A model generated the notes under the pieces. It was not told the origin of the DNA, made no database searches, and worked only from the letters and a program-made list of their open reading frames with translations. The translations under genes and the position numbers were made by a program. Shown piece after piece: positions 34,056-60,173 of a DNA stretch of 64,000 nt. The stretch lies in NCBI RefSeq assembly GCF_011386835.1, contig NC_088810.1:2976001-3040000 (forward strand), in the 5' to 3' direction. The first letter of the stretch is position 1, and every line of letters starts with the position of its first letter. Origin of the DNA: Chrysemys picta bellii. Lineage: Eukaryota.

Positions 34056-35399
34056 CTAAACGGACTTTTTCTCTGCCACCTCCAGAGCCTCGGTGAGCAC
34101 CCGGTGGGCATCCTCAGCAACGCCTTCCAGAAAGGAATGCAGGGCGTTGTATGTAGCTAGGAATGAGATCTGTGTGGCTACGAGGGTTCCATAGACTGGT
34201 AGGAGGCTTATGTACTTTTTAATAATTATCATGGCATTACCCTGTTCCTTGTCCCCTTGCTCCCAGGCAAGATGAGTAGGCTGAGATGATTTAGGTTTAA
34301 ATGATTCTAAAAGCCCGAAGGTGAATGACCTTATTACACTATCTAAAACTTTACTCAACAGCTCCAAAGCATCTTCCCTTGATATTTCCTTGGCCAACGG
34401 GGTCTTGATCACATCCTTCAACTGAGACACGGGTTTCCTGACCTGTTTGGAGAGTTTAATGAGGGATTCTTCATCCAAACCGAAGACTTTGCAGTACTCG
34501 GTCATGGATTCCACCAGGATGTCAATGTCACATGAGACGGAGAGGTGGGGGATGGGAACAGCTGCAATAGCACATGACTTCAGGGCTCGTTTCCAGATCT
34601 GGCTCTTCAGGGCTTCTTTTTTCTTATCCAGGATTGGCCCTGAGATGTTGGGAAGCGCCAAGAGGAAAATGTGTCTCTTGTGAGCGTCCAATTCACTGGC
34701 CAGAGTTTCCTGCAGTTGGGGAGAATCGTATTGGTTGAATTCCCACCTGGAAATGAGGAAAACCTGCGGGGAACTCACCCCTTCTCTCCTCAGCTTCTCC
34801 ACACAGTCATCTCGGATTGTCTGTAAGGTGGTCTCCTGATTGTAGTTTCTTTTTCTACTTTCGTTTCTCAAGTCCTCATCTACTTTGGAGCGCACAAAGT
34901 AGAACTTCTTCCCCATCTTCTGGATCTCCTGGGCTAGGTCTGCATTACAGGATCTGAAGCGCTTCGAAGTGACTATGATGAAGAAGTCATAGCAGGCAAA
35001 GCTGACCTGCTGAAGGTAGGTGTCAGGCTGGAAACTTGGAGTCCCAATCCCAGGCAGGTCCCACATCTTCACATTGGGGAGCGTGGGATGCAGATAAGCG
35101 ATTGGCTCCATTGTTGTTTCGGTGATGCCAACTTTTGCCGCTCCTTCGTCATCGTCGTCTAACTCCAGCATGGCGTTCACAAAGGAAGATTTCCCAGATC
35201 CCGACTCTCCCGTGATGGCGATGTTGAGCTCAGTGTTTTTTAACAGCTCCAGGGCCTCCTGTGCTTTGGAAGCTGCTTCTGAAAGATTCCCTGTTTCAAC
35301 AGCCGCCTTTAGCTCTTCAAGATCCTCCTCGGACATACCAGGGAGTTTAACATCCAGATCTTGAAATATGTTCCTTGATACCTCTTCTGTAGCAGCCAT
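34056..35399 (-). CDS. IRGC-like: G4: IRG p47 GTPase, 447 aa, with an in-frame insertion in the C-terminal helical region
   Basis: GESGSGKS, WDLPG, RSKVD; acceptor CCCCCAG|GGAG ATG. Confidence 0.93.
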   Translation of the reverse strand: MAATEEVSRNIFQDLDVKLPGMSEEDLEELKAAVETGNLSEAASKAQEALELLKNTELNIAITGESGSGKSSFVNAMLELDDDDEGAAKVGITETTMEPIAYLHPTLPNVKMWDLPGIGTPSFQPDTYLQQVSFACYDFFIIVTSKRFRSCNADLAQEIQKMGKKFYFVRSKVDEDLRNESRKRNYNQETTLQTIRDDCVEKLRREGVSSPQVFLISRWEFNQYDSPQLQETLASELDAHKRHIFLLALPNISGPILDKKKEALKSQIWKRALKSCAIAAVPIPHLSVSCDIDILVESMTEYCKVFGLDEESLIKLSKQVRKPVSQLKDVIKTPLAKEISREDALELLSKVLDSVIRSFTFGLLESFKPKSSQPTHLAWEQGDKEQGNAMIIIKKYISLLPVYGTLVATQISFLATYNALHSFLEGVAEDAHRVLTEALEVAEKKSV

Positions 35400-35760
35400 C
35401 TCCCTGGGGGTGGTGGGAAGAGAAGAGAAATATGCTAGTCATGCTCATCTTTCACCCAACCAGCTGTGGTCAAGTTAGGGCACAGAACTGGGACTGTCTA
35501 AGTTGCCCATTATTAATTATTATTATTAATTATTTAATTTAGAGAAATGAACCCACTTGAGATTAGTGCGCTGTCACTGCAGAGGTGCCCCCCAAAATCA
35601 GAGCCCCCACTATGCCAGGGGCTGCACAGAACCAGACCAAGATTGGGGCCTCCACTCTACCGCATGCTGCACAAACCCCAACTAAGATCAGCGCCTCCAT
35701 GATGGCAGGCGCCACACAGACCCTGACGAGATTGGGGCCTCATTGTGCTGGGCACTAATA

Positions 35761-35919
35761 CAGGAATTCCTCACTTAACGTTGTAGTCATGTTCCTGAAA
35801 AATGCAACTTTATGCGAATCCAATTTCCCCATAAGAATTAATGTAAATGAGGGGGTTAGGTTCCAGGGAAATTTTTTTCACCAGACAAAAGTCTATATAT
35901 ATATATATGAGGGATTCTT

Positions 35920-35972
<53 letters not shown>

Positions 35973-36687
35973 AAGTTTTAAACAAACAATTTAATACTGG
36001 TACACAGTGATGATGATTGTGAAGCTTGGTTGAGGTGGAGGAGTCAGAAGGTGGGATATTTCCTGGGGAATGCCTTACTGCTAAATGATGAACTAGCACT
36101 GAGCTGAGCCCTCAAGTGTTAACTCTCACAACACTCTACAAGGCAGCTGGAGTAGCTGACCCCAGGCTTAAGTACACTGCCTTGTCAATGAAATCAGCTT
36201 GCTGAGACCTGAGACCGCAGCTACTGCCTAGAAGCTCCCTCCCTCCATCGTGTGTCCACCCTGCTCTATGGAAGATGGGGTAAGCGGGGTGCACGAGCAG
36301 GGGGGAGGGGGAGACACCCTGACATTAGCCCACCTCTTCCACCCTCCCCCTGTACAGCAAGCAGGAGTCTCTGGGAGCAGCTCCAAGGCAGAGGGCAGGA
36401 GCAGCACATGGCAGTGGGGGGAGGGACAGCTGCTGCACAGGGAACTTAGGGGAGTGGGGAGCTGATAGGGGGAGCTTCTGGGGGGCTGCTGGTCCACCCT
36501 GGTTCCAACAACCCACCAGCTAGCTGCAATGGCCTGCTCTTCCTGCAAACAGTGGACAAAACAGGCAGCTGCCAAACGACGTTAGAAGGGAGCATTGCAC
36601 AACTTTAAACGAGCATGTTCCCTAACTGATCAGCAATTTAACATCAAAACAACGTTAACCGGGATGACTTTAAGTGAGGAGTTCCTG
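35761..36687. mobile_element. Tc1/mariner (Tigger/pogo-like) non-autonomous element
   Basis: 18-bp TIR CAGGAA(T/C)TCCTCACTTAA with TA TSD; empty site at ~55078; contains (TA)n(CA)n. Confidence 0.88.
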
Positions 36688-36689
36688 TA

Positions 36690-37085
36690 TACATAATTAA
36701 TAATTATGGTTATAAAATGGAAGGGGTTTGCAAAAAAAAAAAAAAAAAAAAAATTATGAACCAAAATATTTTGATTTGGAAATGCTTTTGTGATGCCTCA
36801 TGGGAGTTGTAGTTCAGGTGCCTCATGCCTCCATTTGCTATTATAGATCACAGTCACTGGTCGGACTACATTTCCCATGATGCACCACACTTTCCCCTCT
36901 TGGAAAGCGAGGCAGAAAATGACCAGAACCTCTCACCATAGTGCATCATGGGGAACGTAGTCCAGCCGGGGATCTTCACCCATAGAGGAGAATGGGGACA
37001 TGGGGGAAATGAACTACAACTCCCATGAAGCATTGTAGCTGCCCTTCCAAGACAAAATAGTTTGGTTTTCGGCAATTATGGATTT
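36690..37085. mobile_element. Palindromic MITE-like repeat with four ACTACAnnTCCC-type motifs (paralog 55085-55620)
   Basis: Inverted motif pairs at 36801, 36863, 36942 and 37011. Confidence 0.6.
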
Positions 37086-37216
37086 TTTCAATAAAAAATA
37101 AATCTGACTCTATTAGCGGACAATGAAAAACAGCCTTCATCACACCCATAAGCCCACAGAGCTATTGAGATGACATAGGCTGGAGCATGCTGGGATACAG
37201 GCAGTGCATATGTCCT

Positions 37217-38750
37217 GGATCTAATTTACCTTTATTTCAGTAAGGCATTTGATACGGTTCCACATGGGGAATTATTAGCTAAATTGGAAAAGATGGGGAT
37301 CAATATGAAAATTGAAAGGTGGATAAGGAACTGGTTAAAGGGGAGACTACAATGGGTCATACTGAAAGGTGAACTGTCAGGCTGGAAGGAGGTTACTAGT
37401 GGAGTTCCTCAGGGATCGGTTTTGGGACCAATCTTATTTAATCTTTTTATTACTGACCTTGGCACAAAAAGTGGGAATGGGCTAATCAAGTCTGCGGATG
37501 ACACAAAGCTGGGAGGTATTGCCAATACTGAGAAGGACCGGGATATCCTACAGGAAGATCTGGATGACCTTGTAAACTGGAGTAATAGTAATAGGATGAA
37601 ATTTAATAGTGAGAAGTCCAAGGTCATGCATTTAGGGATTAATAACAAGAATTTTGATTATAAATTGGGGAGGCATCAGTTGGAAGTAACAGAGGAGGAG
37701 AAGGACCTCAGAGTATTGGTTGATCACAGGATGACTATGAGCCGTTAATGTGATATGGCCATTAAAAAAGGTAATGCGATCTTGGGATGCATCAGGTGAG
37801 GTATTTCCAGTAAAGATAAGGAGGTGTTAGTACTGTTATACAAGGCACTGGTGAGACCTCATCTGGAATATTGTGTGCAGTTCTGGTCTCCCATGTTTAA
37901 GAAGGATGAATTCAAACTGAAACAGGTACAGAGAAGGGCTACTAGGAATGATCCGAGGAATGGAAAACCTGTCTTATGAAAGGAGACTCAAAGAGCTTGG
38001 TTTGTTTAGCCTAACCAAAAGAAGGCTGAGGGGAGATATGATTGCTCTTTATAAATATATCCGAGGGATAAATATCAGGGAGGGAGAGGAATTATTCAAG
38101 CTTAGTACCAATGTGGACACAAGAACACATGGATATAAACTGGCCATCAGGAAGTTTAGACTTGAAATGAGACGAAGATTTCTAACCATCAGAGGAGTGA
38201 AGTTCTGGAACAGCCTTCCAAAGGGAGTAGTGGGGACAAAAGACCTATTGGGCTTCAAGACTAAGCTTGATAAGTTTATGGAGAGGATGGTATGATGGGA
38301 TAGCTTAATTTTGGCAATTAATTGATCTTTGATTATTAGCAGGTAAATATGCGCAATGGCCTGTGGTGGGATGTTAGATGGGGTGGGATCTGAATTACTA
38401 CAGAGAATTCTTTCCTGGGTGTCTGGCTAGTGAGTCTTGCCCACATGCTCAGGGTTTAGCTGATCGCCATATTTGGGATCGGGAAGGAATTTTCCTTCAT
38501 GAAAGATTGGCAGAGGCCCTGGGGGGGGGGTTTACCTTCCTCTGCAGCATGGGGCATGGGTCACTTGCTGGAGGATTCTCTGCACCTTGAAGTTTTTAAA
38601 CCATAATTTGAGGACGTTAATAGCTCAGACATAGGTTAGGGGTTTATTACAGCAGTGGGTGGGTGAGATTCTGTGGCCTGCATTGTGCAGGAGGTCAGAC
38701 TAGATGATCATAATGGTCCCTCTGACCTTGAAGACTATGAGTCTATGAGT
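37217..38750 (+). mobile_element. Young 5'-truncated CR1 LINE (~1.5 kb)
   Basis: RT ORFs 37284-37748 and 37948-38295, full 3' UTR, (CTATGAGT)2 tail; empty site ATGTCCT|CATCT at ~55742. Confidence 0.95.
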
Positions 38751-39179
38751 CATCTGAAGCCTTGCTAAGTATTTGGTTTTACCATTGGCCCAGATTCACC
38801 TCTGGTGTAAAACTCCACTGATCTCATTAAGCTGGTATTTTAAAGAATAAAATAACTATTAATAATGCCTAAGATGTTTGAGAACCCCAGTGGAACCAAG
38901 GCTGATTGACCCCAGCTGGGATCTGGCCCCATTGACTCCAATGGAGCTATGGTCCATTCACACCAGATGGAGATTCTGACCCATAGATTTTCCCCACCAG
39001 CTGACTAGGGTCCTGTGAGCTCCAGGCCAGTGTATTAACCACAGGAACATTCTTCCTCTTGGCCTGTCTTGCTTTTGTACATTGTCTTACATGTCTGTAT
39101 CGTGCCTAGCACAATGGTTTACTGATATGCAACTGGTGTTCCTACATGCTATCGTAATCATAATAACTATAACAGTAAT

Positions 39180-39385
39180 AATCCCTCACTCTTCTATGGT
39201 ACTTTTCATCCACAGATCTCAAAGCGCTCTACTAAGGAGGCCAATATCATTATCTTTTTTTCACAGATGGAGAAACTGAGGCACGGAGAAGAGAAGTGAT
39301 TTCTCCAAGGTCAACTGGCCAGCCAGCAGCAGAGCTGGAAACAGACTCCACGTCTCCTGCGGTCAAGTCCAGTGCTCCATCTATT
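39180..39385 (+). mobile_element. MIR/CORE SINE
   Basis: CACAGATCTCAAAGCGC...ACAGATGGAGAAACTGAGGCAC...AAGTGATTTCTCCAAGGTC. Confidence 0.8.
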
Positions 39386-39502
39386 AATACAAATGATTAA
39401 TCATAATAACATTCTCCAGTGGGTGAGAAACTCCAGCCCCTGGTGCCCAGCTCCTTTGAGAGTCTCTGCATGGGGGCTATTGTACTTGTGGTGCTCCCAA
39501 AC

Positions 39503-41282
39503 TCACTTTTCCTCTTCTGCCGCCAATCCCTTGATCAGGACCCTTTGGGCATCTTCAGCCACCTTATCCAGAAAGTGCTGCAGGACGGTGCATGTGACCG
39601 AAAAAGCCATTTGTGCCTCCATGGGAGTGTGACGGGCATGACTCAGCATTGCGGTGCCCCCTGCTGGCTGTTCTGGGAATTAGCACTGCTCCCTCCTCTG
39701 GTGGTGTCTCACCTCTGTTCCTGGACCCGTGTCTCTCCACGGACCACAGCATCCTCTTCAGTGACGCTGCCCTTTGGCTCTGCCGCACGCTGTTTCCTCC
39801 TCTTGGGGGACCAGCAATCTCTGTCCCACCACTCCCTCCCTCCGTGGCAACTGCAGTCCACTATCCTGGGGCCACTTCCCAGGTGACTCCGGGACTCTCT
39901 TCATGCTTATCTCAGGCCTCAGCAGGCTGGCCTTAGAGGCCAGTCAGAAACGCTCTCTCACTCCCCTGTTCCTGCCCAGCACTTCTCTGTCGAGGGTGCT
40001 AGCTTCATACTGACTGCAAGGCAGCTAGTCCTCTCTCCTTGAGCTCCAGAGAGTAACTGAAGCTGCTCTGAAGCCCTTCTTATATGGGCCAGCCCGGTCC
40101 TAATTGACTGTTCCACACAGCCCCTCTCTAATTGGCTGCCTCCTGCACAGCCTCCCTTAGGGGCCAGTGTGAGCCAAACACCCCATCACACTCCACCAAA
40201 CAACTGACCAATGGTATCGCATTGAGGATATGTCTGGTTCTTGTCATGCAAGCACCTCCAGCCTGACCCAGCAGATTCAAAGTAAAATGGCTAGATATTT
40301 CTTTGCCTAACGGAGACCTTACCACAGCTCTCAAGTCCACGACAGGCTTCCCAACCTGCTGGGCAAAGTTAACCAGGGAGTCATCATCCAAGCCAAATCT
40401 CTTGCAGTAACTTGACATGCAGTCCATCAACTGGAGAAGTCACAAGCAATGGAGAGAGCCAGATTAAAAACAGCAGAGATGGTGCGGGCTTGTACCCTGA
40501 CCTGCCCCCGCAGGGCTTTCGTCTTCCTTTCGAAGATGGGTGTGAAAATGCTGGGTAGGGCAAAAGGAAAACATGTCTCTTGTGAGCATCAACTTCATCT
40601 GCCAGAGCTTCTTGCAGTCAGGGAGCATCGTACTGGTCGAATTCCCACCTGGAGATGAGGAAAGCCTGTCGGGAGCTCACCCCTTGTCTCTGTGGGGACT
40701 CGATGCAGTCACTTCGGATTCTCTGCAGGGCACCTTCCTGGCTGAAGTTCTTTTTCCTTCTCTCGTTACACAAGTCCATGTCCACCTTGAAGTGCACAAA
40801 AGAGAACTTTTTCCCCATCCTCTGGAACTCCTGGGCCAGGTCAGCATGGGTGGATCTGAACCTGTGTGAAACAAGGATGATGAAGAAATCCTAGCAGGCA
40901 AAGTTGACCTGCTGGAAGTAGGTGTCAGGCCGGAATCTCGGAATCCCAATTCCAAGTAGGTCCCATATCCTCACATTGAGGTGTTTGGGATGAGGAATCA
41001 TGATTGGCAAGCCATGGCTGCACCTTCATCATCAACTTCCATCATCACCAAGCATGGCATTGACGAAGGATGATTTCCCGGAACCCGACTTCCCCGTGAT
41101 GGTGATATCGAGCTTTGCATTTTTCAATAGCTCCAGGGATTCCTGCACTTTGGAAGCCACCTCTGAAAGGTTTTCTTTGTTGATGGCGGCCTCTAGCTCT
41201 TCAAGATCTTCCTTGGACATAGCGGGAAGCTTAAAATCTAAATCCTGTCATCTACCGGCCACAGCACCTTTGTTAACTCCAT
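39503..41282 (-). pseudogene. psi5: disabled IRG paralog
   Basis: IRG homology over the full length; 1-nt deletion near the ATG, deletion and stop after G1, WDLLG, TAG at ~40891, TGA at 40618-40620, a further frameshift, and an LTR insertion. Confidence 0.9.
39628..40190. mobile_element. Solo LTR inserted in psi5
   Basis: TGTGACGGG...CCCCATCACA termini; CTCCA duplicated; uninterrupted site in psi8 (GCCTCCACCAAAC). Confidence 0.82.
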
Positions 41283-41779
41283 CTTGCTGGGGAAAAGGCG
41301 AAATGTCCCAGCCAATATTAACAAAAAGGGAAAATGGAAGCAGGGAAAGACAGAAGGTAGAATTTTTAAGGCTGGTAGGACACCAGTAGATAGCAAACAA
41401 GACCGTGTATCAAGAATAATCTATACTCATTAGCATTTAGGATTAACAAGAGAGAGGAGAGATAGAAAAAGTAATGACTCAGAGCTCTGTGATGGAGATC
41501 TCTGCTTGTGAAGAAATAGAGCTTTGCATTAGAGCTGGGTGAAAACTTTCCAGCAAGTGTTTTTTTTGCCAGTGGCTTTTCCATCGAAACAGAAATTTCT
41601 GTTTTCAAATATTTTTCAAGCTTTTATCCAAAAAAAAAAAAAAAATCCCCACCCAAAAATAGTTAGATTTTGAAAACCTGAATATTTTTGATGCAAAATT
41701 TTGCCCCAAACCAACAGAAAACACGCACACAGAATTTCATGGAGAGAAAAGGACCTACATTCCCCAAACAGCTTTTGCA

Positions 41780-41990
41780 TTTCTTATTGTAGATTCAGGA
41801 AGGGACCATTAGAGCATCAGCCCGACCACTTGTATGAGGTCCAGAGACGTTCCAGAGACGTTCACTGATTTACTCCTGTATCGAGCCCACGGTTGAGCTA
41901 GAGTGTATCTTTTAGGAAGATGCTCCATTTTGATTTAAAGACCCCAAATGATGGAAAATCCACCAGACCCTTGAGCATCACCTTTTAAAC
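41780..41990 (-). mobile_element. CR1 3' end fragment (paralog ~58410-58610)
   Basis: GAAGGGACCATT...TTGATTTAAAGAC...TGGAAAATCCACCA is the reverse of a CR1 3' UTR. Confidence 0.6.
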
Positions 41991-43176: not shown

Positions 43177-43180
43177 ACGA

Positions 43181-43232
<52 letters not shown>

Positions 43233-43233
43233 A
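43177..43233. repeat. (GAAA)n microsatellite
   Basis: Direct tetranucleotide run. Confidence 0.95.
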
Positions 43234-43750
43234 AATCAACTAGGGGCAAACAAAATGTTTTGTTCTCCCCAAAATGATTTTTATTTATTTAGTCTTGAAA
43301 AAAACAAAACAGTTTTGGTTCTAAATGAACTGATTTTTCTAAAGATTGTTTTGGTTCAGCCACTGAACCAACAAAAATCCACTCAACCCTCCCCAGCAGA
43401 CATTTAACACACGCCAGCCGTGCCAGGGGATAGGATAAGAATTAGTGCAATACAAATCAACGCTCCAGCAGATGAGAGACCACTGACATCAACAGACAGC
43501 AATAACTCAAACGACATCTTGGAATGGGAGCGGCACGTTCATATCTGCAGCTTAGTGATCCATGGATGTAGTTCTAGAGTAGATACTGAGTGTCTCCCAA
43601 ACACAGATGGATTAATCCTCACGACAGCCCTGTGAGGCAGGGTAGTTTTAACTTTTTTTTAAATGTAATTATTGTGACTTGGCCTAGGGAATGAGGTGTC
43701 AGATTCGGCTCGATGGCGTTTCTGTTTCTCGATCTTGACACTTTCCCATC

Positions 43751-44980
43751 TTACTCCAGAGCTTTCTTGCGAACACTTCGTGCATCCTCAGCCACCTTCT
43801 CCAGGAAGTTTGACAGAATGGAGTAGGACGTGGCAAAGGACAACCCGGCTGCAGCCAGGGTGCTAATCACTGGGACGAGGTCAAAGTTTTGTTCAACCGA
43901 GCGGGTGAGGCTGCACCCAACCTGGACAATCTTCTTCATTAATACATCTTGGGTGAGAACTTCCCCTTGTGGTGAGACGATAACAGCCTTGAGCTCTGAG
44001 ACAGGCTTCCCAGCCTGCCTGGCCAGTTTAGCTAAGGAGTCATCGTCAAGGCTGAATTGTTTGTAGAAGGCGATCATGGATACCAACAGGAGGCCAACAT
44101 CACAGGCGAGAGAGAGACCTCCCATGGGAAGGACATTGATAAAAGCCGACACCAGGGATATTTTCCATATGTGCCCCCGCAGAGCAGATTTCTTCTTCTC
44201 TATGATTTCCGGAGAGAAGTTGGGCAGGCTGAGCAGGAACACAAGTCTCTGTAGATGGGGGAGGTCATTCTCCAGCGTCTCCTCCAGCAAGGGAAAATCA
44301 TACTGGTCTAAGTCCCAGTTGGAGAGAAGAAATACCTGGGGGTCGATTGCTCCTTGGTCTCTCAGGTATTTCCTGGCATTCTCCCTGATCCTCTGGAAAA
44401 CATTCTCTTCGACATAGGCTTGAGGATGAGCCCTTCTTGCGTTGGCCAAGTCTTCATCCACTTTGCAATGCACAAAATAGAACTTCTTCTCCATCCTCTG
44501 GATCTCCCGGGCCAGGTCGGCGTGGCTGGATCGGAACCGCTCAGAAGCAACAATGACAAAGAAGTCATAGCGTCTGAAATTCACCTGCTGGAGGTATCTC
44601 TCTGGTCGAAAATCCATCGCCCCGATCCCCGGCAGGTCCCACAGGATCACATTCAGGTAGCTTGGATGGGGATAAGCCTTCAGCTCTGTCGTTGTTTCTA
44701 TCACCCCTGTCTGAGCCGCGCCTTGATCTTCAGCACCCAAACCGCGGAGGGCATTGATGAAGGAGGATTTTCCAGAGCCCGTCTCCCCCGTGACAGCAAT
44801 GTTGAGCTTGGTGTTTTCCAGCGACTCCAGATCCTCCTGAGCTTTGGAGGCTGCCTCTGCCTGGCCTCCATCCTTGAAAAGCTCCACGAATTTCTCATAC
44901 ACCTGTAGTGCTGCATTGAAAAACCCCTTAGGGTCTGACTCAATGTCAATGCCCTTCGTCAGAGCTGAGAGAGCCTCCAT
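43751..44980 (-). CDS. IRGC-like: G6: IRG p47 GTPase, 409 aa (divergent subfamily)
   Basis: GETGSGKS, WDLPG, HCKVD; acceptor CTCTGCGGCAG directly abuts the ATG. Confidence 0.95.
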   Translation of the reverse strand: MEALSALTKGIDIESDPKGFFNAALQVYEKFVELFKDGGQAEAASKAQEDLESLENTKLNIAVTGETGSGKSSFINALRGLGAEDQGAAQTGVIETTTELKAYPHPSYLNVILWDLPGIGAMDFRPERYLQQVNFRRYDFFVIVASERFRSSHADLAREIQRMEKKFYFVHCKVDEDLANARRAHPQAYVEENVFQRIRENARKYLRDQGAIDPQVFLLSNWDLDQYDFPLLEETLENDLPHLQRLVFLLSLPNFSPEIIEKKKSALRGHIWKISLVSAFINVLPMGGLSLACDVGLLLVSMIAFYKQFSLDDDSLAKLARQAGKPVSELKAVIVSPQGEVLTQDVLMKKIVQVGCSLTRSVEQNFDLVPVISTLAAAGLSFATSYSILSNFLEKVAEDARSVRKKALE

Positions 44981-46099: not shown

Positions 46100-46700
46100 A
46101 ACCCCCTACCTGGGCAGAAACTCTTACCAGCCACACGAGCGAGCAGGACGTTCCCCGTGAAGCACAAGACACACCCCGATGCAGGGCTCTGTCTGCTTCC
46201 CTCTGCAGTCAAATGGAAAACCAACGTTGCAGAGAAAGTATCAGAGGGGTAGCCGTGTTAGTCTGGATCTGTAAAACGCAACAGAGAGTCCTGTGGCACC
46301 TTTAAGGGTATGCGTCTGACGAAGTGGGTATTCACCCACAAAAGCTTATGCTCCAATACATCTGTTAGTCGTAAAGGTGCCACAGGATTCTCTGTTGCTT
46401 GCTACAGAGAAAAGCAGCCCTGGGGAATTTGAAGCCACACCCTTTCCTGGCAGATTAGCTGCAGCCAGCTCTGAGTTCCTGCAGATACCAGAGAGCGGGA
46501 CTGGACAGACAGACACGGGGATTGGAGGCTGGAACCCCAAAAATGTCAGGATTGCCTTAACAAAGAAGGAAAACACTGAATTTGGAACAGAGACTCATTT
46601 AATTCACTTTCAGTCAAGTAGACAAATTTAATTGTGGTGCAAAACTGCTCATTAAAGCACTACTCAGGGGCTGTCTCCCCCACCCCCCACACGCATCCAC
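46100..46700 (-). promoter_or_regulatory. Candidate promoter and first exon of G6 (paralog 61145-61560 for G9)
   Basis: Conserved donors G|GTAAGAG (46127; 61173) and CAG|GTAGGG (46109; 61155); conserved IRF-E-like TTCACTTTC (46603; 61476). Confidence 0.4.
46229..46400. mobile_element. Penelope-like element fragment
   Basis: GTAGCCGTGTTAGTCTG...GTGGCACCTT...AAGGTGCCACAGG inverted arrangement; absent in the second copy. Confidence 0.7.
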
Positions 46701-50262: not shown

Positions 50263-50272
50263 NNNNNNNNNN
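50263..50272. other. Assembly gap (10 N)
   Basis: N run. Confidence 1.
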
Positions 50273-50273
50273 T

Positions 50274-52740: not shown

Positions 52741-53554
52741 AGGAGAGAGCAGGCAGAGCCCACCTGGAGACAGGACAGATCTAGATGTATGGTGCTGAGG
52801 GAAGCCAGGACTGTGGCCCTGAGAGTTTCCTGTGCTGAGTTCAAATGCTCAATAAACCTCCTGTTTTACACTGGCTGAGAGTCGCTCCGGGCTAGAGAAC
52901 AGGGGGGCATTATTCCCTCTGGGTGTGGAGGCCTGAGGGGACCCACGGCAGAACCAGGTTTGCTGAAGGCTCAGAGAGGTGCGGTTCCTGGAGGCGCTGG
53001 AGTCCAGGGCTTTACCCCCGAGAGAGAGTGTGGACCCCCGAGTAGGGCTGTCACACTGAAGGGGGTTACTCCCAGGAACCGTACGAAGCCGAGAGAGCAT
53101 GAGTCCTGTGCGTCTGTGACACACAGGAATACAACTTTAACAAAACAAACTAAAGAGCTTCTAGTTTGCTTTCGAACTGCTGTGCACAGCTGTACTGGGT
53201 TCTCAACCGAGCTTCCAGGGCACATCACTAAATTCCTGCATTCATAATTCACTTCATTATGTGGGAGCGTCTCTAAATTCTAATCTTCAACAAACATCTC
53301 TCTAAAACCCCAACCCAGATCAGGGCCCCATTATGCCGGGCGCTGCACAGACACAGAGGGAGACACAGTTTCTGCCCCCAATGAGCTTACAGTCTAAATA
53401 GACAAAGGATTATTCTCTCCATGTTATAGGCTGGGAAACTGAGGCACAGAGATGACTAGACGTGATGAAGGTCCCACAGGCAGGCTGTGGTGGAGGCAGG
53501 TCTCCTGAGTCACACTCCAACACTCTGACTGCAACGCCATCCTCCCCGGTGCCA

Positions 53555-54868
53555 CTAAACAGACTTTTTCTCTGCCACCTCCAGAGCCTCGGTGAGCACC
53601 CGGTGGGCATCCTCAGCAACGCCTTCCAGAAAGGAATGCAGGGCGTTGTATGTAGCTCGGAATGAGAGCTCTGCAGCTAGGAGGGTTCCATAGACTGGTA
53701 CGAGGCTTATGTACTTTTTAATATTTATAATGGAATCATCCATCAGCCCGCATCGGCTGAACAAGGAACCACCAAGAGGGAAGAGAACATCGACGAATGG
53801 ACTTATTGTACCTGTAACCTTGCTCAGCAGCTCCAAAGCATCTTCTCTTGATATTTCCTTGGCCAACGGGGTCTTGATCACATCCTTCAACTGAGACACG
53901 GGTTTCCTGACCTGTTTGGAGAGTTTAATGAGGGATTCTTCATCCAAACCGAAGACTTTGCAGTACTCGGTCATGGATTCCACCAGGATGTCAACATCAC
54001 ATGAGACGGAGAGGTGGGGGATGGGAACAGCTGCGATGGCGCATGACTTCAGGGCTCGTTTCCAGATCTGCCTCTTCAGGGCTTCTTTTTTCATAACCAG
54101 GATTGGCCTTGAGATGTTGGGAAGCGCCAGGAGGAAAACGTGTCTCTTGTGAGAGTCCAGTTCGTTTGCCAGAGTTTCCTGCAGTTGAGGAAAATCATAT
54201 TGGTCGAATTCACAACTGGCAATGAGGAAAACCTGTGGGGAATTTACCCCTTCTCTCCTCAGCCTATCCACACAGTAGTCTCGGATTGTCTGTAAGGTGG
54301 TCTCCTGATTGTAGTTTCTTTTTCTACTTTCATTTCTCAAGTCCTCATCTACTTTGGAGCGCACAAAGTAGAACTTCTTCCCCATCTTCTGGATCTCCTG
54401 GGCCAGGTCTGCATTACAGGATCTGATGCGCTTCGAAGTGACAATGATGAAGAAGTCATAGCGGGCAAAGCTGACCTGCTGAAGGTAGGTGTCAGGCCGG
54501 AAACTTGGAGTCCCAATCCCAGGCAGGTCCCACATCTTCACATTGGAGAGCATGGGATGCAGATAAGCGGTTGGCTCTGTTGTCATTTCTGTGATGCCAA
54601 CCTCGGCTGCTCCTTTGTCATCGTCGGCTAAGCCCCGCATGGCGTTGACGAAGGACGATTTCCCAGATCCCGACTCCCCCGTGATGGCGATGTTGAGCTC
54701 AGTGTTTTTTGACAGCTCCAGGGCCTCGTGTGCTTTTTGAGCTGCTTCTGAAAGGTTCCCTGTTTCAAGGGCAGCCTTTAGCTCTTCAACATCCTCCTCG
54801 GACATACCAGGGAGTTTAACATCCCGATCTTGAAATAAACCAGACGAAGTTTCTCCAGTAGCATCCAT
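53555..54868 (-). CDS. IRGC-like: G7: IRG p47 GTPase, 437 aa, duplicate of G4
   Basis: GESGSGKS, WDLPG, RSKVD; ATG at 54868 after acceptor CCCCCAG|AGAG. Confidence 0.93.
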   Translation of the reverse strand: MDATGETSSGLFQDRDVKLPGMSEEDVEELKAALETGNLSEAAQKAHEALELSKNTELNIAITGESGSGKSSFVNAMRGLADDDKGAAEVGITEMTTEPTAYLHPMLSNVKMWDLPGIGTPSFRPDTYLQQVSFARYDFFIIVTSKRIRSCNADLAQEIQKMGKKFYFVRSKVDEDLRNESRKRNYNQETTLQTIRDYCVDRLRREGVNSPQVFLIASCEFDQYDFPQLQETLANELDSHKRHVFLLALPNISRPILVMKKEALKRQIWKRALKSCAIAAVPIPHLSVSCDVDILVESMTEYCKVFGLDEESLIKLSKQVRKPVSQLKDVIKTPLAKEISREDALELLSKVTGTISPFVDVLFPLGGSLFSRCGLMDDSIINIKKYISLVPVYGTLLAAELSFRATYNALHSFLEGVAEDAHRVLTEALEVAEKKSV

Positions 54869-55404
54869 CTCTCTGGGGGAAGGGAAGAGAAGAAAAAGAT
54901 TGTAGTCATTGTCACAGTGCACCAGGCCCTCCGTGGCCCAGTGGGTCACACTGAGATTTAGAAGACGTTGGTTCTATTCCTCTTTCTACCCTTTGTCTAG
55001 TTAGGTCAAGGGCTATAACTCTTCCTCTACAGCATCTAGCGCAAGGCAACCTTAATCTATGTATGTGCCACTGTAATATACATAATTAATAACTATGGTT
55101 AGTAAATGGGAAGGGTCTGCAAAAAAAAGCATGAACCAAAATATTTTGATTTAGAAATCCTGTTGTGATGTCTCATGGGAGTTGTAGTTCAGGTGACTCA
55201 TGCCCCCATTCACCATTATAGACCAGACTCCCTGGTTGGACTACATTTCCCATGATGCACCACACTTTCCCTTCTTGGAGAGAGAGAGAGGCAGAACATC
55301 ACTGGAGCCTCTCAGCATAGTGCCTCATGGGGGATGTAGTTCAGCCGGGGATCCTCACTCATCGAGGAGAATGAGGACATGAGGGAAATGAACTACAACT
55401 TCTA

Positions 55405-55483
55405 TGTGGCACCTTTAAGACTAACAGATGTATTGAAGCATAAGCTTTCGTGGGTGAATACCCACTTTTGTCAGACGCATGCC
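55405..55483. mobile_element. Penelope-like fragment
   Basis: GTGGCACCTTTAAGACTAACAGATGTATTGAAGCATAAGCTTTCGTGGGTGAATACCCAC, reverse match to the 46229 element. Confidence 0.7.
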
Positions 55484-55761
55484 TATGAGGCAGTGCAGCT
55501 GCCCTTCCAAGACAAAATATTTTGGGTGGGTTTTTTGTAATTATGGATGTTTTTAAGAAAAGAAAATCTGACTCTTTCAAAACCAGATTGGATGACAAAT
55601 TTTCAACCAATAATAGTTAATGATAAGCTGCAGTCAGTAGCAATGAGCGAGGAGTTTCAGCCTTCATCACACCCATAAGCCCACAGAGCTGGTGAGATAA
55701 CATAGGCTGGAGCATTCTGGGATGCAGGCAGCACCCATGTCCTCATCTCAAACCCTGCTTA

Positions 55762-55950
55762 TGTAACCCACACACATCCTGGGTGCGGTGCTCTGTCCTC
55801 TCTAGTGGCACTGAGACGACTTAGAGATAGATTAATGAGTCTGCTCTACAGTCTTAGCTAAGGGACATGTGGCTTTTAGCTCATGCACTAAGCTTCAGAG
55901 ATTCTAGGTTCGATCCCACCCACCAACGACCGGGGTCTGTTGGTGTTACA
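55762..55950 (+). mobile_element. 189-bp TGTAAC...GTTACA element with an internal tRNA-like Pol III cassette
   Basis: 6-bp inverted ends, CTTA/CTAA flanks, A-box-like TAGCTCA (55877), B-box GGTTCGATCCC (55907); absent at the paralogous site ~38764. Confidence 0.7.
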
Positions 55951-56639
55951 CTAAGTTCTTCTTAGTTTTATGATTCGCCCAGATTCACCTTTGGTGTAAA
56001 ACTCTGCTGATCTCATTAAACTGATATTTTAAAGAATAAAATAATTATTAATAATGCTTACGATGTTTGAGTGCCCCATTAACTCCAATGGAGCTACAGT
56101 CCATTGACCCCAGCTGGGATCTGGCCCCATTGATTCCAATGGAGCCATGGCCCGTTCACAGCAGCTGGAGATTCTGACCCATAGATTTTCCCCGCCATCA
56201 GACTAGAATCCTCTGAGCTCCAGGCCTGTGCATTAATCACAAGACCATAGTGCCGACTTTCTAATGCGCTGGGGTGCTTGACCCCCAAGCTCTGCCCCAG
56301 CACCTCCCCCACTCCAACCCTTCCCCCAAGACCCCACCCCCGCCCTGCCTCTTCCGCCCCCGCTCCACTCCACCCCTCCCCACCTCTTCCCACCCCATTC
56401 TGCCCCCTCCCCGAAGTGCACCACACCCTCACGCCTTCCCTCTCCCCCTCAGCGCCTCCTGCATGCCACGGAGCAACTGATCGCGGCGGGCGGGAGGCAC
56501 TGGGAGGGAGGGGGGAGGCACTGATACAAGTGATTAATCCTCATAACTTTTTCCAGTGGGTGAGAGACTCTGGTCGCTGGTCTCCAGCTCCCTTGAGAGT
56601 CTCTGTCTGGGGACTATTGAACTGCTGAGACTGCTGCAC

Positions 56640-57865
56640 TCACTTTTTCTCTTCCGCCTCCAATGCCTTGATCAGGACCCTTTGGGCATCTTCAGCCGCG
56701 TTATCCAGAAAGCGCTGCAGGACGGTGCATGTGACCAAAAAAGTCATCTGTGCCTCCACCAAACCACCGACCAACGGTATCGCACTGAGGATACCCCTGG
56801 TTCTCGTCATGCAATCAGCTCTAGCCTTGGCCAGCAGATTCAAAGTAAAATGACTAGATATTTCTTTGCCTAGCGGAGACCTTACCACAGCTCTCAAGTC
56901 CATGACAGGCTTCCCAAGCTGCTGGGCAAAGTTAACCGGGGAGTCGTCATCCAAGCCAAAGCTCTTGCAGTAACTTGACATGCAGTCTATCAACTGGGGA
57001 ACGCCACAATCAATGGAGGGACCTGGATTAAAAACAGCAGAGACGGTGCGGGCTTGTACCCTGACCTGCCCCTGCAGGGCTTTCATCTTCCTTTCGAAGA
57101 TGAGTCTGAAAATGCCGGGTACGGCAAGAAGCAAAACACGTCTCTTGTGAGCATCGACTTCATCTGCCAGAGCTTCTTGCAGTCAGGGAGCATCGTACTG
57201 GTCGAATTCCCACCTGGAGATGAGGAAAGCCTGTCGGGATCTCACCCCTTGTCTCTGCGGCGACTCGATGCAGTCACTTCGGATTCTCTGCAGGGCACCC
57301 TCCTGGCTGAAGTTCTTTTTCCTTCTCTCGTTACACAAGTCCATGTCCACCTTGGAGTGCACAAAGCAGAACTTTTTCCCCATCCTCTAGATCTTCTGGG
57401 TCAGGACAGCATGGGTGTATTTGAATCGCTCTGCAGCGATGATGATGAAGCAATCATAGTGGGAAAAGTTGACCTGCTGGAGGTATGTGTCAAGCCAGAA
57501 TCTCGGTGTCCCAATTCCTGGTAGGTCACACAGCCTCACATGGGGTGTTTGGGAAGAGAATAAGCAGTTGGCGCCATTGTCATTTCAAAGACACAAACCT
57601 TAGCTGCACCTTCATCATCATCTTCCAAACCCCGGATGCCATTGATGAAGGATGACTTCCCAGTGCCCATCTCCCCCATGATGGCGATGTCAAGCTTGGC
57701 ATTTTTCAATAGCTCCAGGGATTTCTGCACTTTGGAAGCTGCTGCTGAAAGGTTTCCTCTATCGATGGCAACCTGAAACTCTTCTAGATCCTCCTTGGAC
57801 ATAGCAGGGAGCTTAAAATCCAAATCCCGTGATCTACCAGCCAGAGCACCATTTGGTAACTCCAT
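56640..57865 (-). pseudogene. psi8: disabled IRG paralog, duplicate of psi5
   Basis: GEMGTGKS intact; 1-nt deletion at ~57540, CDLPG, TAG at 57387-57389, TGA at 57183-57185; C-terminal frame open. Confidence 0.9.
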
Positions 57866-58943
57866 CTTTCTGGGGAAAAGGAGAAATACACCAGCCAATA
57901 TTGACAGAAAGGGAGAATTGGAGCAGGGGAGGACACAAATGAGAATTGTAAAGGTTCTTCAAATGTTCCTGCCTCTTTGTAAGGCTGGTAAGATAGCAGC
58001 TGGAGCTTACAGATGAAATGGATCAAGAACAACCTTTACTCAACAACACTTCAGATGAACAGGAGAGAGGAGAGGTGGAAAACGAGACGACTCAGAGCTC
58101 TGTGGTGGAGATCTCTGCTTGTGAAGAAATAGAGGTTTGCATTAGAGCTGGGAGAAAATTTTTTTTTTGCCAGTGTTCTTTTGATCAAAACAGAAATATC
58201 CATTTTCAAATATTTTTCAAGCTTTTGTCAAAACAAACAAAAAAACCACTGGAAAAAGTCAGATGTTGACGAAATCCTGAACATTTTTTATGCAGAATTT
58301 TGACCAAAACCAACACAACCCCCCCCCCCACACACACACACAGTTTCATGGAGGGAAAAAACCCTACATTCCCCAAACAGCTCTTGCTTTTCTTATTGTT
58401 GATTCCCAGACCTGAAAGCCAGAAGGAACCATTGGAACATCAGGCTGACCACCCGTATAACACCGGCCAGAGACGTTCACCAAGTTACTTCTGTACTGAG
58501 CCCACAGTTCACCTAGAGTGTATCTTTTAGGAAGATGCTTTATTTTGATTTAAAGACTCCAAATGATCGAAAATCCACCAGATCCTTGTGCATCACCTTT
58601 TAAACAAGAAAAATGAATATCTGCTCAGCAAATTCTCTCTCTTGGAAGAGATTTTTTCCAAGTGTGTTTTTTCCACAGTCTAATTTGAATGATCCCAATT
58701 TCAATCACCAACATTCCTGCCCTTTCCTCTCCCTGATATAATAATGTCAATTTCCCCACAGGAAATCTGGAAATGAAAATGTTTGTGTTGATTTAAAATT
58801 CCACTTCAGACTCAAATTAATGGTGATTCAAAACAAAAATGCTCTGTGTGAATTGGTTCCAAACTTTCAACATTTTCCAACCAAAAAATTTTGAACACTT
58901 TGCATTCAAAATCTCTGTTTCTCAATTTTGACACGTTCCCATC

Positions 58944-60173
58944 TTACTCCAGAGCTTTCTTGCGAACCCTACATGCATCCTCAGCCACCTTCTCCAGGAA
59001 GTTTGACAGAATGGAGTAGGACGTAGCAAAGGACAATCCGGCTGCAGCCAGGGTGCTAAGCACTGGGACGAGGTCAAAGCATCGTTCGACTGAGCGGATG
59101 AGGCCACACCCAACCTGGACAATCTTCTTCTTTAATACATCTTGGGTGAGAACTTCCCCTTGTGGTGAGACGATAACAGCCTTGAGCTCTGAGACAGGCT
59201 TCCCAGCCTGCCTGGCCAGTTTAGCTAAGGAGTCATCGTCAAGGTTGAATTGTTTGTAGAAAGCGATCATGGATACCAACAGGAGGCCAACATCACAGGC
59301 GAGAGAGACGCCTCCCATGGGAAGGACATTGATAAAAGCCGACACCAGGGATATTTTCCATAAGTGCCCACGCAGAGCAGATTTCTTCTTCTCTATGATT
59401 TCCGGAGAGAAGTTGGGCAGGCTGAGCAGGAACACAAGTCTCTGTAGACGGGGGAGGTCCTTCTCCAGAGTCTCCTCCAGCAAGGGAAAATCATACTGGT
59501 CTAAGTCCCAGTTGGAGAGAAGAAAGACCTGGGGGTCGATTGCTCCTTGGTCTCTCAGGCATTTCCTGGCGTTCTCCCTGATCCTCTGGAGAACATTCTC
59601 TTCGACATGGGCTTGAGGATGAGCCCTTCTTGCGTTGGCCAAGTCTTCATCCACTTTGCAGCGCACAAAATAGAACTTCTTCTCCATCCTCTGGATCTCC
59701 CGGGCCAGGTCGGCGTGGCTAGATCGGAACCGCTCCGAAGCAACAATGACAAAGAAGTCATAGTGTCTGAAATTCACCTGCTGGAGGTATCTCTCTGGTC
59801 GAAAATCCATCGCCCCGATCCCCGGCAGGTCCCACAGGATCACATTCAGGTAGCTTGGATGGGGATAAGCCATCGCCTCTGTCGTTGTTTCTATCACCCC
59901 TGTCTGAGCCGCGCCTTGATCTTCAGCACCCAAACCGCGGAGGGCATTGATGAAGGAGGATTTTCCAGAGCCCGTCTCCCCCGTGACAGCAATGTTGAGC
60001 TTGGTGTTTTCCAGCGACTCCAGATCCTCCTGAGCTTTGGAGGCTGCCTCTTCCTGGCCTCCATCCTTGAAAAGCTCCACGAATTTCTCATACACCTGTA
60101 GTGCTGCATTGAAAAACCCCTTAGGGTCTGACTCAATGTCAATGCCCTTCGTCAGAGCTGAGAGAGCCTCCAT
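58944..60173 (-). CDS. IRGC-like: G9: IRG p47 GTPase, 409 aa, duplicate of G6 (21 aa differences by manual count)
   Basis: GETGSGKS, WDLPG, RCKVD; same acceptor as G6. Confidence 0.95.
   Translation of the reverse strand: MEALSALTKGIDIESDPKGFFNAALQVYEKFVELFKDGGQEEAASKAQEDLESLENTKLNIAVTGETGSGKSSFINALRGLGAEDQGAAQTGVIETTTEAMAYPHPSYLNVILWDLPGIGAMDFRPERYLQQVNFRHYDFFVIVASERFRSSHADLAREIQRMEKKFYFVRCKVDEDLANARRAHPQAHVEENVLQRIRENARKCLRDQGAIDPQVFLLSNWDLDQYDFPLLEETLEKDLPRLQRLVFLLSLPNFSPEIIEKKKSALRGHLWKISLVSAFINVLPMGGVSLACDVGLLLVSMIAFYKQFNLDDDSLAKLARQAGKPVSELKAVIVSPQGEVLTQDVLKKKIVQVGCGLIRSVERCFDLVPVLSTLAAAGLSFATSYSILSNFLEKVAEDACRVRKKALE

What the first reader, a model, noticed from the sequence alone, without database searches (positions are those of the whole stretch)
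34056..60173. Stop-codon-overlapping splice donors could chain IRG genes into in-frame tandem or triple polyproteins
Seen in sequence: on the minus strand G6 and G9 end CTG GA|G TAA GA (donor GTAAGA at 43754 and 58947). psi5 and psi8 end AA|G TGA GT (perfect GTGAGT at 39506 and 56643). All four donors are phase 2 and would remove the stop. Each downstream unit has a pyrimidine tract and CAG exactly 4 nt before its ATG (psi5 CAG|CAAG, psi8 CAG|AAAG, G4 CAG|GGAG, G7 CAG|AGAG), so every join is in frame. That covers G6>psi5>G4, G9>psi8>G7, and skipping the dead middle unit (G6>G4, G9>G7; about 850 aa, two GTPase domains). The terminal units G4 and G7 have a non-consensus sequence at the homologous position (AA|GTC(C/T)GT). 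G1 and G3 have no such donor, and the weak G2 site (A|GTGAAT) would be out of frame with G3. Established: mouse makes tandem IRGs (e.g. Irgb2-b1) by splicing adjacent genes, and these matter in resistance to Toxoplasma. Inference: a reptile IRG cassette that can be expressed as monomers or spliced multimers. Caveats: the two cassettes are duplicates, so there are only two independent donor observations, and the 4-nt acceptor spacing also occurs in G1 and G2, so it may simply be ancestral.
Basis: partly seen in the sequence, partly recalled or inferred. Interest (0 to 1): 0.88.

Follow-up and report, generated by a model that had tools for sequence, protein, structure and literature searches.

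The report
Decayed turtle triple-IRG GTPase gene
Here its first unit is dead and its second is lost, so a fused protein from this locus is unlikely.

Summary
The window is Chrysemys picta bellii. It holds two copies of a cassette: A (G9/G6), dead B (psi8/psi5) and D (G7/G4).

In Gopherus and Pangshura the orthologous locus is A | B-C-D. Public gene models there join B-C-D into 1231-1269 aa three-GTPase proteins.

In this genome the chain is broken:
- psi5, psi8 and Malaclemys psiB share a TGA at B codon 228, so B died before the cassette duplicated.
- C is absent. G7 is a C-head/D-body recombinant.

The G6/G9 donor GGA|GTAAGA is weak and near chance expectation. Its flank is conserved as well. 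Five of the seven A-unit records I opened (12 named in that cluster) are 409 aa and stand alone; a sixth only adds N-terminal residues. No G9>psi8, G9>G7 or psi8>G7 joint appeared in four runs of contigs of uncertain type.

Verdict: observation confirmed, interpretation right in kind, wrong for this locus. RNA evidence is thin.

The parts
58944..60173 (-). G9, A-type IRG gene, 409 aa, intact. It ends ...KKALE with stop TAA inside GGA|GTAAGA (donor G at 58947).
   Evidence: Orthologues of 409 aa in Malaclemys, Caretta and Emydura. dN/dS 0.26-0.47.
61174..61341 (-). Upstream exon of the A-type gene, ending CCG|GTAAGA at 61174. It is coding in C. picta isoform X1 of a paralogous copy.
   Evidence: The 56-aa N-terminal extension of XP_008176427.2 maps here at 87.5% identity. 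The second half of its 3' boundary sequence sits next to the 96%-identical inter-cassette block 61274-61548 vs 46401-46675.
56640..57865 (-). psi8, dead B-type unit. It has a 1-nt deletion at B nt 325 and stops at B codons 160 and 228. It keeps acceptor CAG|AAAG (57869) and donor AAAAA|GTGAGT over TGA (56643).
   Evidence: 76-78% aa identity to Gopherus B.
53555..54868 (-). G7, intact D-type unit, 437 aa. Its upstream flank and first ~40 nt are C-type and the rest is D-type, so it is a C/D recombinant. Acceptor CAG|AGAG at 54872.
   Evidence: Contig X5 record 25 stops matching at 54873 and carries 28 further unplaced letters.
43751..44980 (-). G6, A-type IRG gene, 409 aa, the paralogue of G9 (95.7% DNA identity). 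Same GGA|GTAAGA at 43754.
39503..41282 (-). psi5, dead B-type unit with many frameshifts and stops and an insertion of about 570 nt. It shares the TGA at B codon 228 with psi8. It keeps CAG|CAAG (41286) and AAAAG|TGAGT (39506).
34056..35399 (-). G4, intact D-type unit, 447 aa, with D-type upstream flank. Acceptor CAG|GGAG at 35403.
   Evidence: 83.7% aa identity to Gopherus D.
58911..58946 (-). First ~33 nt after the A stop (also 43718-43753 for G6). Nearly invariant across seven turtle sequences. Contains a GAAACAGA(A/G)A(C/T) ISRE-like core.
   Evidence: dS between Emydura and cryptodire A genes is about 0.30.
50263..50272 (.). Assembly gap between the two cassettes. Not part of any unit or proposed intron.
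   Evidence: Not filled or looked up.

Best explanation
**What is here.** The region holds two diverged copies of an old turtle IRG cassette. Each copy has three parts:
- a stand-alone A-type IRG gene (G9, G6);
- the wreck of a B unit (psi8, psi5);
- one surviving D-type unit (G7, G4).

**What it came from.** B and D are the remains of a multi-GTPase gene, B-C-D. In tortoises and geoemydid turtles that gene is still intact. There each upstream unit ends in a 5' splice site that contains its own stop codon: AAAAA|GTGAGT for B and AGT|GTAAGT for C. Each downstream unit begins with the family's ordinary 3' splice site 4 nt before the ATG. Two bases before the intron plus four after it keep the frame. 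If the site is spliced the stop is removed and the next GTPase unit is added. If it is not spliced, translation stops at the end of that unit (inference).

**What happened in the painted-turtle lineage.**
- B was killed by a nonsense mutation before the cassette duplicated.
- C was lost separately in each copy: by C/D recombination in the G7 copy and by deletion in the G4 copy.
- D kept its ATG and is now most likely made as a single 437-447 aa protein.

**What the splice signals are now.** The psi donors and the -4 acceptors are retained ancestral signals. The acceptors probably still serve as 5'UTR-to-coding-exon junctions. The GTAAGA over the G6/G9 stop is most likely not a working donor for a fusion protein.

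**Shown:** motif positions, orthology, the exon junctions of the public models, the shared lesion in B, the recombinant origin of G7.
**Inferred:** that the triple mRNA is really made, and how G4 and G7 are transcribed today.
For: **Identity of the genome.** The window is GCA_011386835.2 CM062337.1. An NCBI C. picta bellii protein sits on a contig of the same length.

**Orthologous loci.** Order A, B, C, D in Gopherus flavomarginatus (L003) and Pangshura tecta (L004). A, frameshifted B, D in Malaclemys (L005). A, B relic, D in Caretta (L006). A, C-terminal relic, D, next A in the pleurodire Emydura (L007).

**The triple models.** XP_050786288 (1260 aa), G. evgoodei XP_030399355-8 (1263), Mauremys mutica X1/X2 (1268/1231), Chelonoidis abingdonii (1269, flagged low quality) and Pangshura (1263). 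Their junction residues, KK-E-(M/L)DATGE and E(I/R)V-E-MA(A/S)TEE, fit exactly the DNA junctions AA|GTGAGT...CAG|GGAG and GT|GTAAGT...CAG|GGAG.

**Evidence independent of the gene models.**
- Gopherus C begins CTG, not ATG, yet keeps an open reading frame of about 400 codons.
- Gopherus-Pangshura dN/dS is 0.41 for B, 0.35 for C and 0.28 for D.
- In Caretta, where B is dead, the D acceptor CAG has become CAAG and the -4 spacing is lost.

**Decay in this lineage.** TGA at B codon 228 is shared by psi5, psi8 and Malaclemys psiB. No C relic is in the window. G7's upstream flank is 84-95% identical to the Gopherus C flank and 19-47% to the D flank; from about +41 it is 92-97% D-like.

**A and D stand alone.** G9, G6 and G7 are on record as 409, 409 and 437 aa genes on this assembly. 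Five of the seven A-unit records I opened (12 are named in that cluster, several partial) are 409 aa, and the 465 aa C. picta isoform only adds N-terminal residues.
Against: - The triple proteins are computed gene models. I could not see the RNA evidence behind them, and one is flagged low quality.
- My only RNA-type data were Logan contigs of uncertain library type at depth 2-5. They also cover intergenic DNA, so the absence of joints is weak evidence.
- All three units that have a same-strand downstream partner (A, B, C) carry a stop-overlapping GTRAG. None of G1, G2, G3 or D does. A is the outgroup of the family (46-47% to B/C/D), so its site arose independently.
- The ~33 nt after the A stop are far more conserved than synonymous sites.
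- Two gene models, Caretta CAM4710695.1 and Chelydra A0A8C3TFI5, do splice at the A donor.
Confidence: 0.72

Rival explanations
1. After B died, transcripts from the A promoter splice from GGA|GTAAGA (58947, 43754) straight to the D acceptor (54872, 35403). That would make an A-D two-GTPase protein of about 850 aa (...KKALE-E-MDATGE / ...KKALE-E-MAATEE), alongside monomeric A made when the site is not spliced.
For: - The join is in frame.
- The site is identical in seven sequences spanning pleurodires and cryptodires, and the next ~33 nt are nearly invariant although dS is about 0.30.
- It arose independently of the B/C donor, in the one other unit that has a downstream partner.
- Two gene models splice there.
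- No higher-identity block lies upstream of G4 or G7: the inter-cassette identity there is 84-87%, against 96% upstream of G6/G9.
Against: - The donor scores only 4.5 bits. A site that good follows a G|TAA stop 35% of the time by chance.
- No such joint was seen in four runs. Two contigs run unbroken across 58947: X2 record 14 and X3 record 22.
- The contig that ends at the G7 acceptor (X5 record 25) matches one base further, to 54873. That fits an upstream exon ending in G, whereas the A and B donor exons end in A. Its 28 loose letters were not placed inside 54400-60300, although the tool did report a joint with a 23-letter side.
- NCBI records G9, G6 and G7 as separate 409/409/437 aa genes, and only the longest product of a gene is kept.
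- A junction-centred search with the Caretta A-D model found no other A-D protein.
- The Caretta model needs a species-specific 31-nt exon with donor TGT|GTGGAC.
Confidence: 0.13
2. The dead B unit is still spliced. Transcripts enter psi8 or psi5 at the kept acceptor, leave at the kept GTGAGT donor and join G7 or G4. The pseudogene then acts as a long untranslated leader exon that damps or regulates D expression. Alternatively it is skipped from a shared upstream exon.
For: - Both psi copies and Malaclemys psiB keep a 9-bit donor and a good acceptor although the coding frame is ruined.
- No block of above-background identity lies directly upstream of G4 or G7.
- Contig X5 record 25 suggests the G7 acceptor is used with an exon that lies outside 54400-60300.
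Against: - psi8-psi5 identity is about 85%, the same as intergenic DNA. A 9-nt site survives that by chance about a quarter of the time.
- No 56644>54872 joint was seen.
- A Terrapene Ensembl model places a separate 5' exon in the spacer, at the place homologous to window 55656-55727.
- A leader of 1.2 kb full of short reading frames would be a poor mRNA (general knowledge).
Confidence: 0.12
3. Nothing is spliced anywhere. The triple proteins are annotation artefacts that merge neighbouring single-exon genes, and all stop-overlapping GT sites are coincidence.
For: - Gene predictors do merge adjacent IRG genes. Several Terrapene Ensembl models and the Caretta A-D model have implausible junctions.
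- I saw no RNA reads for the triple.
Against: - The same junctions appear in six models from five genera, built by at least two pipelines.
- The B and C donors score high and are homologous to each other.
- Gopherus C lacks an ATG but stays open under purifying selection.
- Several transcript variants and isoforms are recorded.
Confidence: 0.03

Closest known systems
Mouse tandem IRGB proteins (Irgb2-b1, Irgb5-b4 and relatives)
   Same: Adjacent head-to-tail IRG coding units are transcribed together and the spacer is removed as an intron, giving one reading frame with two full GTPase units. Downstream units lack their own 5' exons and interferon promoters (PMC1297648, PMC3810784). The turtle B-C-D models work the same way, and Gopherus C has even lost its ATG.
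   Different: The turtle gene has three units, not two. It is a separate origin in a different IRG clade. Here each upstream unit's stop sits inside the donor. Whether the mouse junction is built like that I did not test. In this window the gene is decayed. Mouse units are said to be expressed only as tandems, whereas the turtle D unit keeps its own ATG.
Zebrafish irgg-irgq1 tandem transcript
   Same: An IRG unit is joined to a downstream, modified IRG-like unit in one transcript (PMC1297648).
   Different: Both fish units are truncated and the second is a quasi-GTPase. The turtle units are full length.
NCBI models of 'uncharacterized protein' LOC127038011 (Gopherus flavomarginatus), LOC115640609 (G. 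evgoodei) and LOC123351333 (Mauremys mutica)
   Same: These are the direct orthologues of psi8/psi5 plus G7/G4.
   Different: They are intact B-C-D. The window has dead B, no C, and a lone D.
Other two-unit IRG models in C. picta bellii (LOC101948288, 851 aa, two A'-like units)
   Same: They show that multi-unit IRG models exist in this species. Earlier scan notes report double-domain IRGs about 1.47 Mb away on this chromosome (unchecked).
   Different: Different paralogues, not in the window. Their junction (...ALTEDGKKRAID-MESTS) is not at the ALE stop used by G6/G9.

Membership tests
IRG / p47 immunity-related GTPases (Pfam IIGP, PF05049) | Full-length match to the IIGP profile, with the P-loop GxxxxGKS | tested here: met
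   G4, G6, G7 and G9 score E 1e-102 to 1e-104 over nearly the whole profile. GESGSGKSS / GETGSGKSS are present.
IRG / p47 immunity-related GTPases (Pfam IIGP, PF05049) | Whole protein on one long 3' exon behind untranslated 5' exon(s) | tested here: met
   Single uninterrupted ORFs, each with a pyrimidine tract and AG 0-4 nt before the ATG. An upstream exon for the A type lies at 61174-61341.
IRG / p47 immunity-related GTPases (Pfam IIGP, PF05049) | Interferon inducibility (ISRE/GAS promoter, induced expression) | tested here: inconclusive
   No promoter-placed strict ISRE was found in the window. The only strict matches lie in G4/G7 coding sequence. An ISRE-like core follows the A stop. Expression was not measurable.
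Spliced tandem (multi-unit) IRG genes, as mouse Irgb2-b1 | Two or more intact IRG units, head to tail on one strand | tested here: not met
   Within each cassette the unit between A and D is a pseudogene with shared stop and frameshifts. Met in the orthologous Gopherus and Pangshura loci.
Spliced tandem (multi-unit) IRG genes, as mouse Irgb2-b1 | Donor that removes the upstream stop and acceptor before the downstream start, in frame | tested here: met
   Present at psi5/psi8 (strong), G6/G9 (weak) and all four acceptors. Identical sites form the model junctions in Gopherus and Pangshura.
Spliced tandem (multi-unit) IRG genes, as mouse Irgb2-b1 | Junction-spanning transcripts | tested here: inconclusive
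   No joint 58948>57869, 58948>54872 or 56644>54872 in four runs. These were low-depth contigs of unconfirmed RNA origin.
Spliced tandem (multi-unit) IRG genes, as mouse Irgb2-b1 | Downstream unit lacks its own start codon, promoter or 5' exon | tested here: inconclusive
   G4 and G7 keep an ATG. No block of above-background identity lies upstream of them. A Terrapene model has a 5' exon in the spacer. Gopherus C has CTG.
Spliced tandem (multi-unit) IRG genes, as mouse Irgb2-b1 | Protein of double or triple unit size | not testable with these tools
   Needs a western blot or proteomics.

The most novel reading that the evidence does not exclude
Turtles carry an undescribed kind of IRG gene in which each GTPase unit ends in a 'stop-or-splice' site, a 5' splice site with the stop codon inside it. 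One locus could then yield one-, two- or three-GTPase proteins according to splicing. On this reading the conserved GTAAGA plus the invariant 33 nt after the A stop is a fourth such switch, which in painted turtles would still join A to D.
Probability: 0.12. Interest if true: 0.8.

Novelty: new variant of a known kind. Interest (0 to 1): 0.5.

Why it matters
Tandem IRG proteins are the polymorphic resistance factors that let wild mice survive virulent Toxoplasma (PMC3810784, PMC6420625). So far they are described mainly from rodents.

The comparison made here points to an independent multi-unit IRG gene in turtles, and a larger one with three units. Its junctions are built so that splicing decides whether translation stops or continues.

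It also shows the gene's life history across turtles:
- intact in tortoises and geoemydids;
- B dead and C recombined away in emydids;
- reduced to relics in sea turtles and a side-necked turtle.

That gives a natural series for asking what multi-unit IRGs are for. For this window itself the practical message is cautionary: good-looking, in-frame splice signals can be fossils.

Tried and rejected
- **RNA evidence.** None showed the predicted joints. The library type is only guessed, so this is weak negative evidence. The 28 loose letters at the G7 acceptor were not printed, and none of the printed loose ends maps in the window.
- **Promoter scan.** Strict ISREs fall only inside G4/G7 coding sequence. 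No promoter could be assigned.
- **Transcript contigs by exact protein.** G9 and G7 are found only on the genome record. P0003 and P0182 are not on record.
- **Search for A-D fusions.** Using the Caretta 866-aa model's junction region as query, I found none besides that model.
- **The Caretta A-D model as support.** Rejected. Its bridge is a 31-nt exon found only in Caretta, with donor TGT|GTGGAC.
- **The Chelydra A extension as support.** Rejected. It matches sequence that in the other turtles lies several kb upstream of A, which I suspect is an interspersed repeat (the repeat status is untested).
- **Terrapene Ensembl tandem and triple models** (D>A'-type, G2>G3). They have non-homologous internal junctions and were not used as evidence.
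- **Literature.** No paper on reptile or turtle tandem IRGs is in the held library.
- **Splice scoring.** MaxEntScan and SpliceAI are not available. I used a rough weight matrix from remembered consensus frequencies, so the bit scores are approximate.

Full report
**1. The observation**

All motifs are at the stated places on the minus strand.
- G6 and G9 end CTGGA|GTAAGA, at 43754 and 58947.
- psi5 and psi8 end AAAA|GTGAGT, at 39506 and 56643.
- G4, psi5, G7 and psi8 each have a pyrimidine tract and CAG four bases before the ATG.

Six ORFs in the window match Pfam IIGP (PF05049) end to end. The psi units read only in pieces. G6 and G9 stop right after the conserved ...ALE, 3-8 residues earlier than the other units.

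The assembly gap at 50263-50272 lies between the two cassettes. It is in no unit and in no proposed intron.

**2. How unusual are the sites?**

I scored donors with a rough weight matrix built from remembered consensus frequencies, so the numbers are approximate.
- The psi donor scores 9.0 bits. A site that good occurs about once per 2900 nt in this window.
- The G6/G9 donor scores 4.5 bits, about once per 194 nt.
- Given a last sense base G and a TAA stop, a donor of 4.5 bits or more follows by chance in 35% of flanks. A 9-bit one follows a G|TGA stop in 3%.

The -4 acceptor is also in G1 and G2. G3 has -3. The A units have the AG against the ATG. It is the family's ordinary junction between 5'UTR and coding exon (PMC1297648). 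Any stop-overlapping G|TRA donor is phase 2 and is therefore automatically in frame with it. 'Every join is in frame' is thus one coincidence, not several.

**3. Source and cassette structure**

The window is GCA_011386835.2, CM062337.1, near 3.02-3.05 Mb. An NCBI Chrysemys picta bellii protein sits on a contig of the same length.

The two cassettes have diverged to these identities:

| Pair | DNA identity |
|---|---|
| G9/G6 | 95.7% |
| G7/G4 | 91-94% |
| psi8/psi5 | 85.7% |
| intergenic | 82-87% |

**4. The decisive comparison**

A full HMMER search with G9 put two- and three-stretch IRG proteins at the top. One of them, Gopherus evgoodei A0A8C4YCV2, starts with an intact version of psi8 (MELPKGAMAGG...) and continues ...ALEVEEKK-E-LDATGEASSGIF.

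Searching with that protein found three-unit models of 1231-1269 aa:
- Gopherus flavomarginatus, G. evgoodei, Mauremys mutica (two isoforms) and Chelonoidis abingdonii (flagged low quality), all from NCBI;
- Pangshura tecta, from a GenBank submission.

I fetched the G. flavomarginatus and Pangshura DNA. The order there is A | B, C, D. A is 92-93% identical in protein to G9. B corresponds to psi5/psi8 and D to G4/G7.

The model junctions are as follows:

| Join | Donor | Acceptor |
|---|---|---|
| B>C | GAGAAAAA\|GTGAGT, stop TGA inside the donor | CAG\|GGAG(A/C)TG |
| C>D | (A/G)AGT\|GTAAGT, stop TAA inside the donor | CAG\|GGAGATG |

The protein residues at the joins (KK-E-M/L and V-E-M) fit these DNA junctions exactly.

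**5. Is the triple real, or only an annotation?**

I could not see the underlying RNA. Three points do not depend on the gene models.
- In both Gopherus species unit C begins CTG (Leu) instead of ATG, yet it stays open for about 400 codons.
- Gopherus-Pangshura dN/dS is 0.41 for B, 0.35 for C and 0.28 for D.
- In Caretta, where B is a wreck, the D acceptor has changed from CAG|GGAG to CAAGGAG, so the frame-keeping -4 spacing is gone.

The B and C donors are homologous to each other. At the same place D reads AAG TC(C/T) GT.

**6. What happened in this genome**

psi8 has a 1-nt deletion at B nt 325 and stops at B codons 160 and 228. psi5 has many more lesions. Both psi units and Malaclemys psiB share the TGA at codon 228. 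B therefore died before the cassette duplicated and before Chrysemys and Malaclemys split.

No C unit or relic is in the window. G7 and Malaclemys D have C-type upstream sequence and C-type first codons: 84-95% identity to the Gopherus C flank against 19-47% to the D flank. From about +41 they are D-type, at 92-97%. This copy lost C by recombination between C and D.

G4 has a D-type flank. Its spacer still contains B-C spacer blocks, so C was deleted separately there. G4 and G7 remain open, with dN/dS 0.52 and dS 0.19.

A polyprotein through psi5 or psi8 is therefore impossible in this genome.

**7. The A donor (G6/G9)**

Points in its favour:
- CTGGAG|TAAGA is identical in seven sequences, including the pleurodire Emydura.
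- The following ~33 nt are almost invariant although dS to Emydura is about 0.30.
- The site arose independently of the B/C donor. A is the most distant unit, 46-47% identical to B, C and D.
- Two gene models splice there.

Points against:
- It is weak and close to chance expectation.
- The conserved block has other possible readings. It contains a GAAACAGAAAC ISRE-like core. An AATAAA-like signal follows at about +80. Its first codons look like former coding sequence (*DGK against EDGKK in A'-type paralogues).
- Five of the seven A-unit records I opened are 409 aa and end ...KKALE: Malaclemys, Caretta X2, Emydura, C. picta XP_008176427.1 and the window's own copy. The A cluster names 12 members, several of them partial or from other sea turtles. 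The 465-aa C. picta isoform only adds an N-terminal exon, at window 61174-61341.
- NCBI records G9, G6 and G7 on this assembly as separate 409, 409 and 437 aa genes, and the collection keeps only the longest product of a gene.
- The Caretta A-D model needs a Caretta-specific 31-nt exon with a poor donor.
- The Chelydra extension matches sequence that elsewhere lies several kb upstream of A and looks repeat-like.
- A junction-centred search found no other A-D protein.
- In G. flavomarginatus A itself has a premature stop at codon 150.

**8. Reads**

Four runs, all Logan contigs of guessed RNA type, gave no predicted joint on 54400-60300.
- Contigs run unbroken over the G9 donor: X2 record 14 (58846-58996) and X3 record 22 (58913-59117).
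- Contigs run unbroken over the psi8 acceptor: X1 record 4, X2 record 12 and X3 record 21.
- Because contigs at depth 2-5 also cover intergenic DNA, these may be DNA or pre-mRNA.
- One contig, X5 record 25, matches 54668-54873 and then carries 28 unplaced letters. It breaks at the G7 acceptor.
- That contig matches one base into the intron's AG. This fits an upstream exon ending in G, whereas the A and B donor exons end in A. The tool placed no partner inside the stretch, although it reported another joint with a 23-letter side.
- This hints that G7 is spliced to an exon outside 54400-60300. It is one contig and an inference.

**9. Conclusion**

In this window the chain is a fossil. B is dead, C is gone, and D and A most likely work as single-unit genes. 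I put an A>D fusion at roughly one in eight.

Tandem IRGs are known from mouse (PMC1297648, PMC3810784). I found no paper on a turtle or three-unit IRG in the held library. The triple exists in public annotation only as 'uncharacterized protein'.

Noticed in passing
window 58911-58946 and 43718-43753 (minus strand); L003 7148-7185: The ~33 nt right after the A-type stop (TAAGATGGGAAAGTGTCAAGATCGAGAAACAG) are nearly invariant in seven sequences from pleurodire to cryptodire turtles, though synonymous divergence is about 0.30. They hold a GAAACAGAAAC ISRE-like core, intact in G6 and Pangshura and altered in G9, Malaclemys and Gopherus. The block could be a promoter for the downstream gene, a 3'UTR element or a splice enhancer. 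It is unexplained.
   Followed up: partly
window 53555-54868 (G7) against 34056-35399 (G4), protein alignment A1 columns ~373-408: D-type units carry an extra 28-38 codon stretch in the C-terminal helical part that other IRGs lack. It differs strongly in sequence and length between G4 and G7 while its flanks are highly conserved. Mauremys isoform X2 leaves D by a donor at the start of this stretch.
   Followed up: no
window 16299-17540 (G2) and 26409-27641 (G3), plus strand: A Terrapene Ensembl model (A0A674I8.., 790 aa) joins the G2 and G3 orthologues into a tandem (...ALETEEK-HPPTVPHTSREQ-KFIPGNKF...). The junction does not match an obvious donor in this window, and the basis of the model is unknown.
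   Followed up: partly
L003 5921-7147 (Gopherus flavomarginatus A unit): The A-type gene has an in-frame stop at codon 150 in this tortoise assembly and is not among the genes called there, although the neighbouring B-C-D gene is intact.
   Followed up: partly
window 55385-55581: Contig depth of hundreds to thousands in all four runs: a high-copy interspersed repeat in the psi8-G7 spacer.
   Followed up: no
window 63890-63967 (minus strand); L001 6207-6284: A sequence (GGTGACCAGATGTCCCAATTTTATAGGGACAGTCCCGATTTTGGGGG...) that appears as a coding extension in a Chelydra Ensembl IRG model. It recurs upstream of A in several turtles and looks like an interspersed repeat.
   Followed up: no
same chromosome, outside the window: At least a third A-type copy exists in this genome. 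XP_008176427.2 differs from both G9 and G6, and its first exon matches the window at only 87.5%. Separate two-unit IRG models (668-851 aa) are annotated elsewhere on the chromosome.
   Followed up: no
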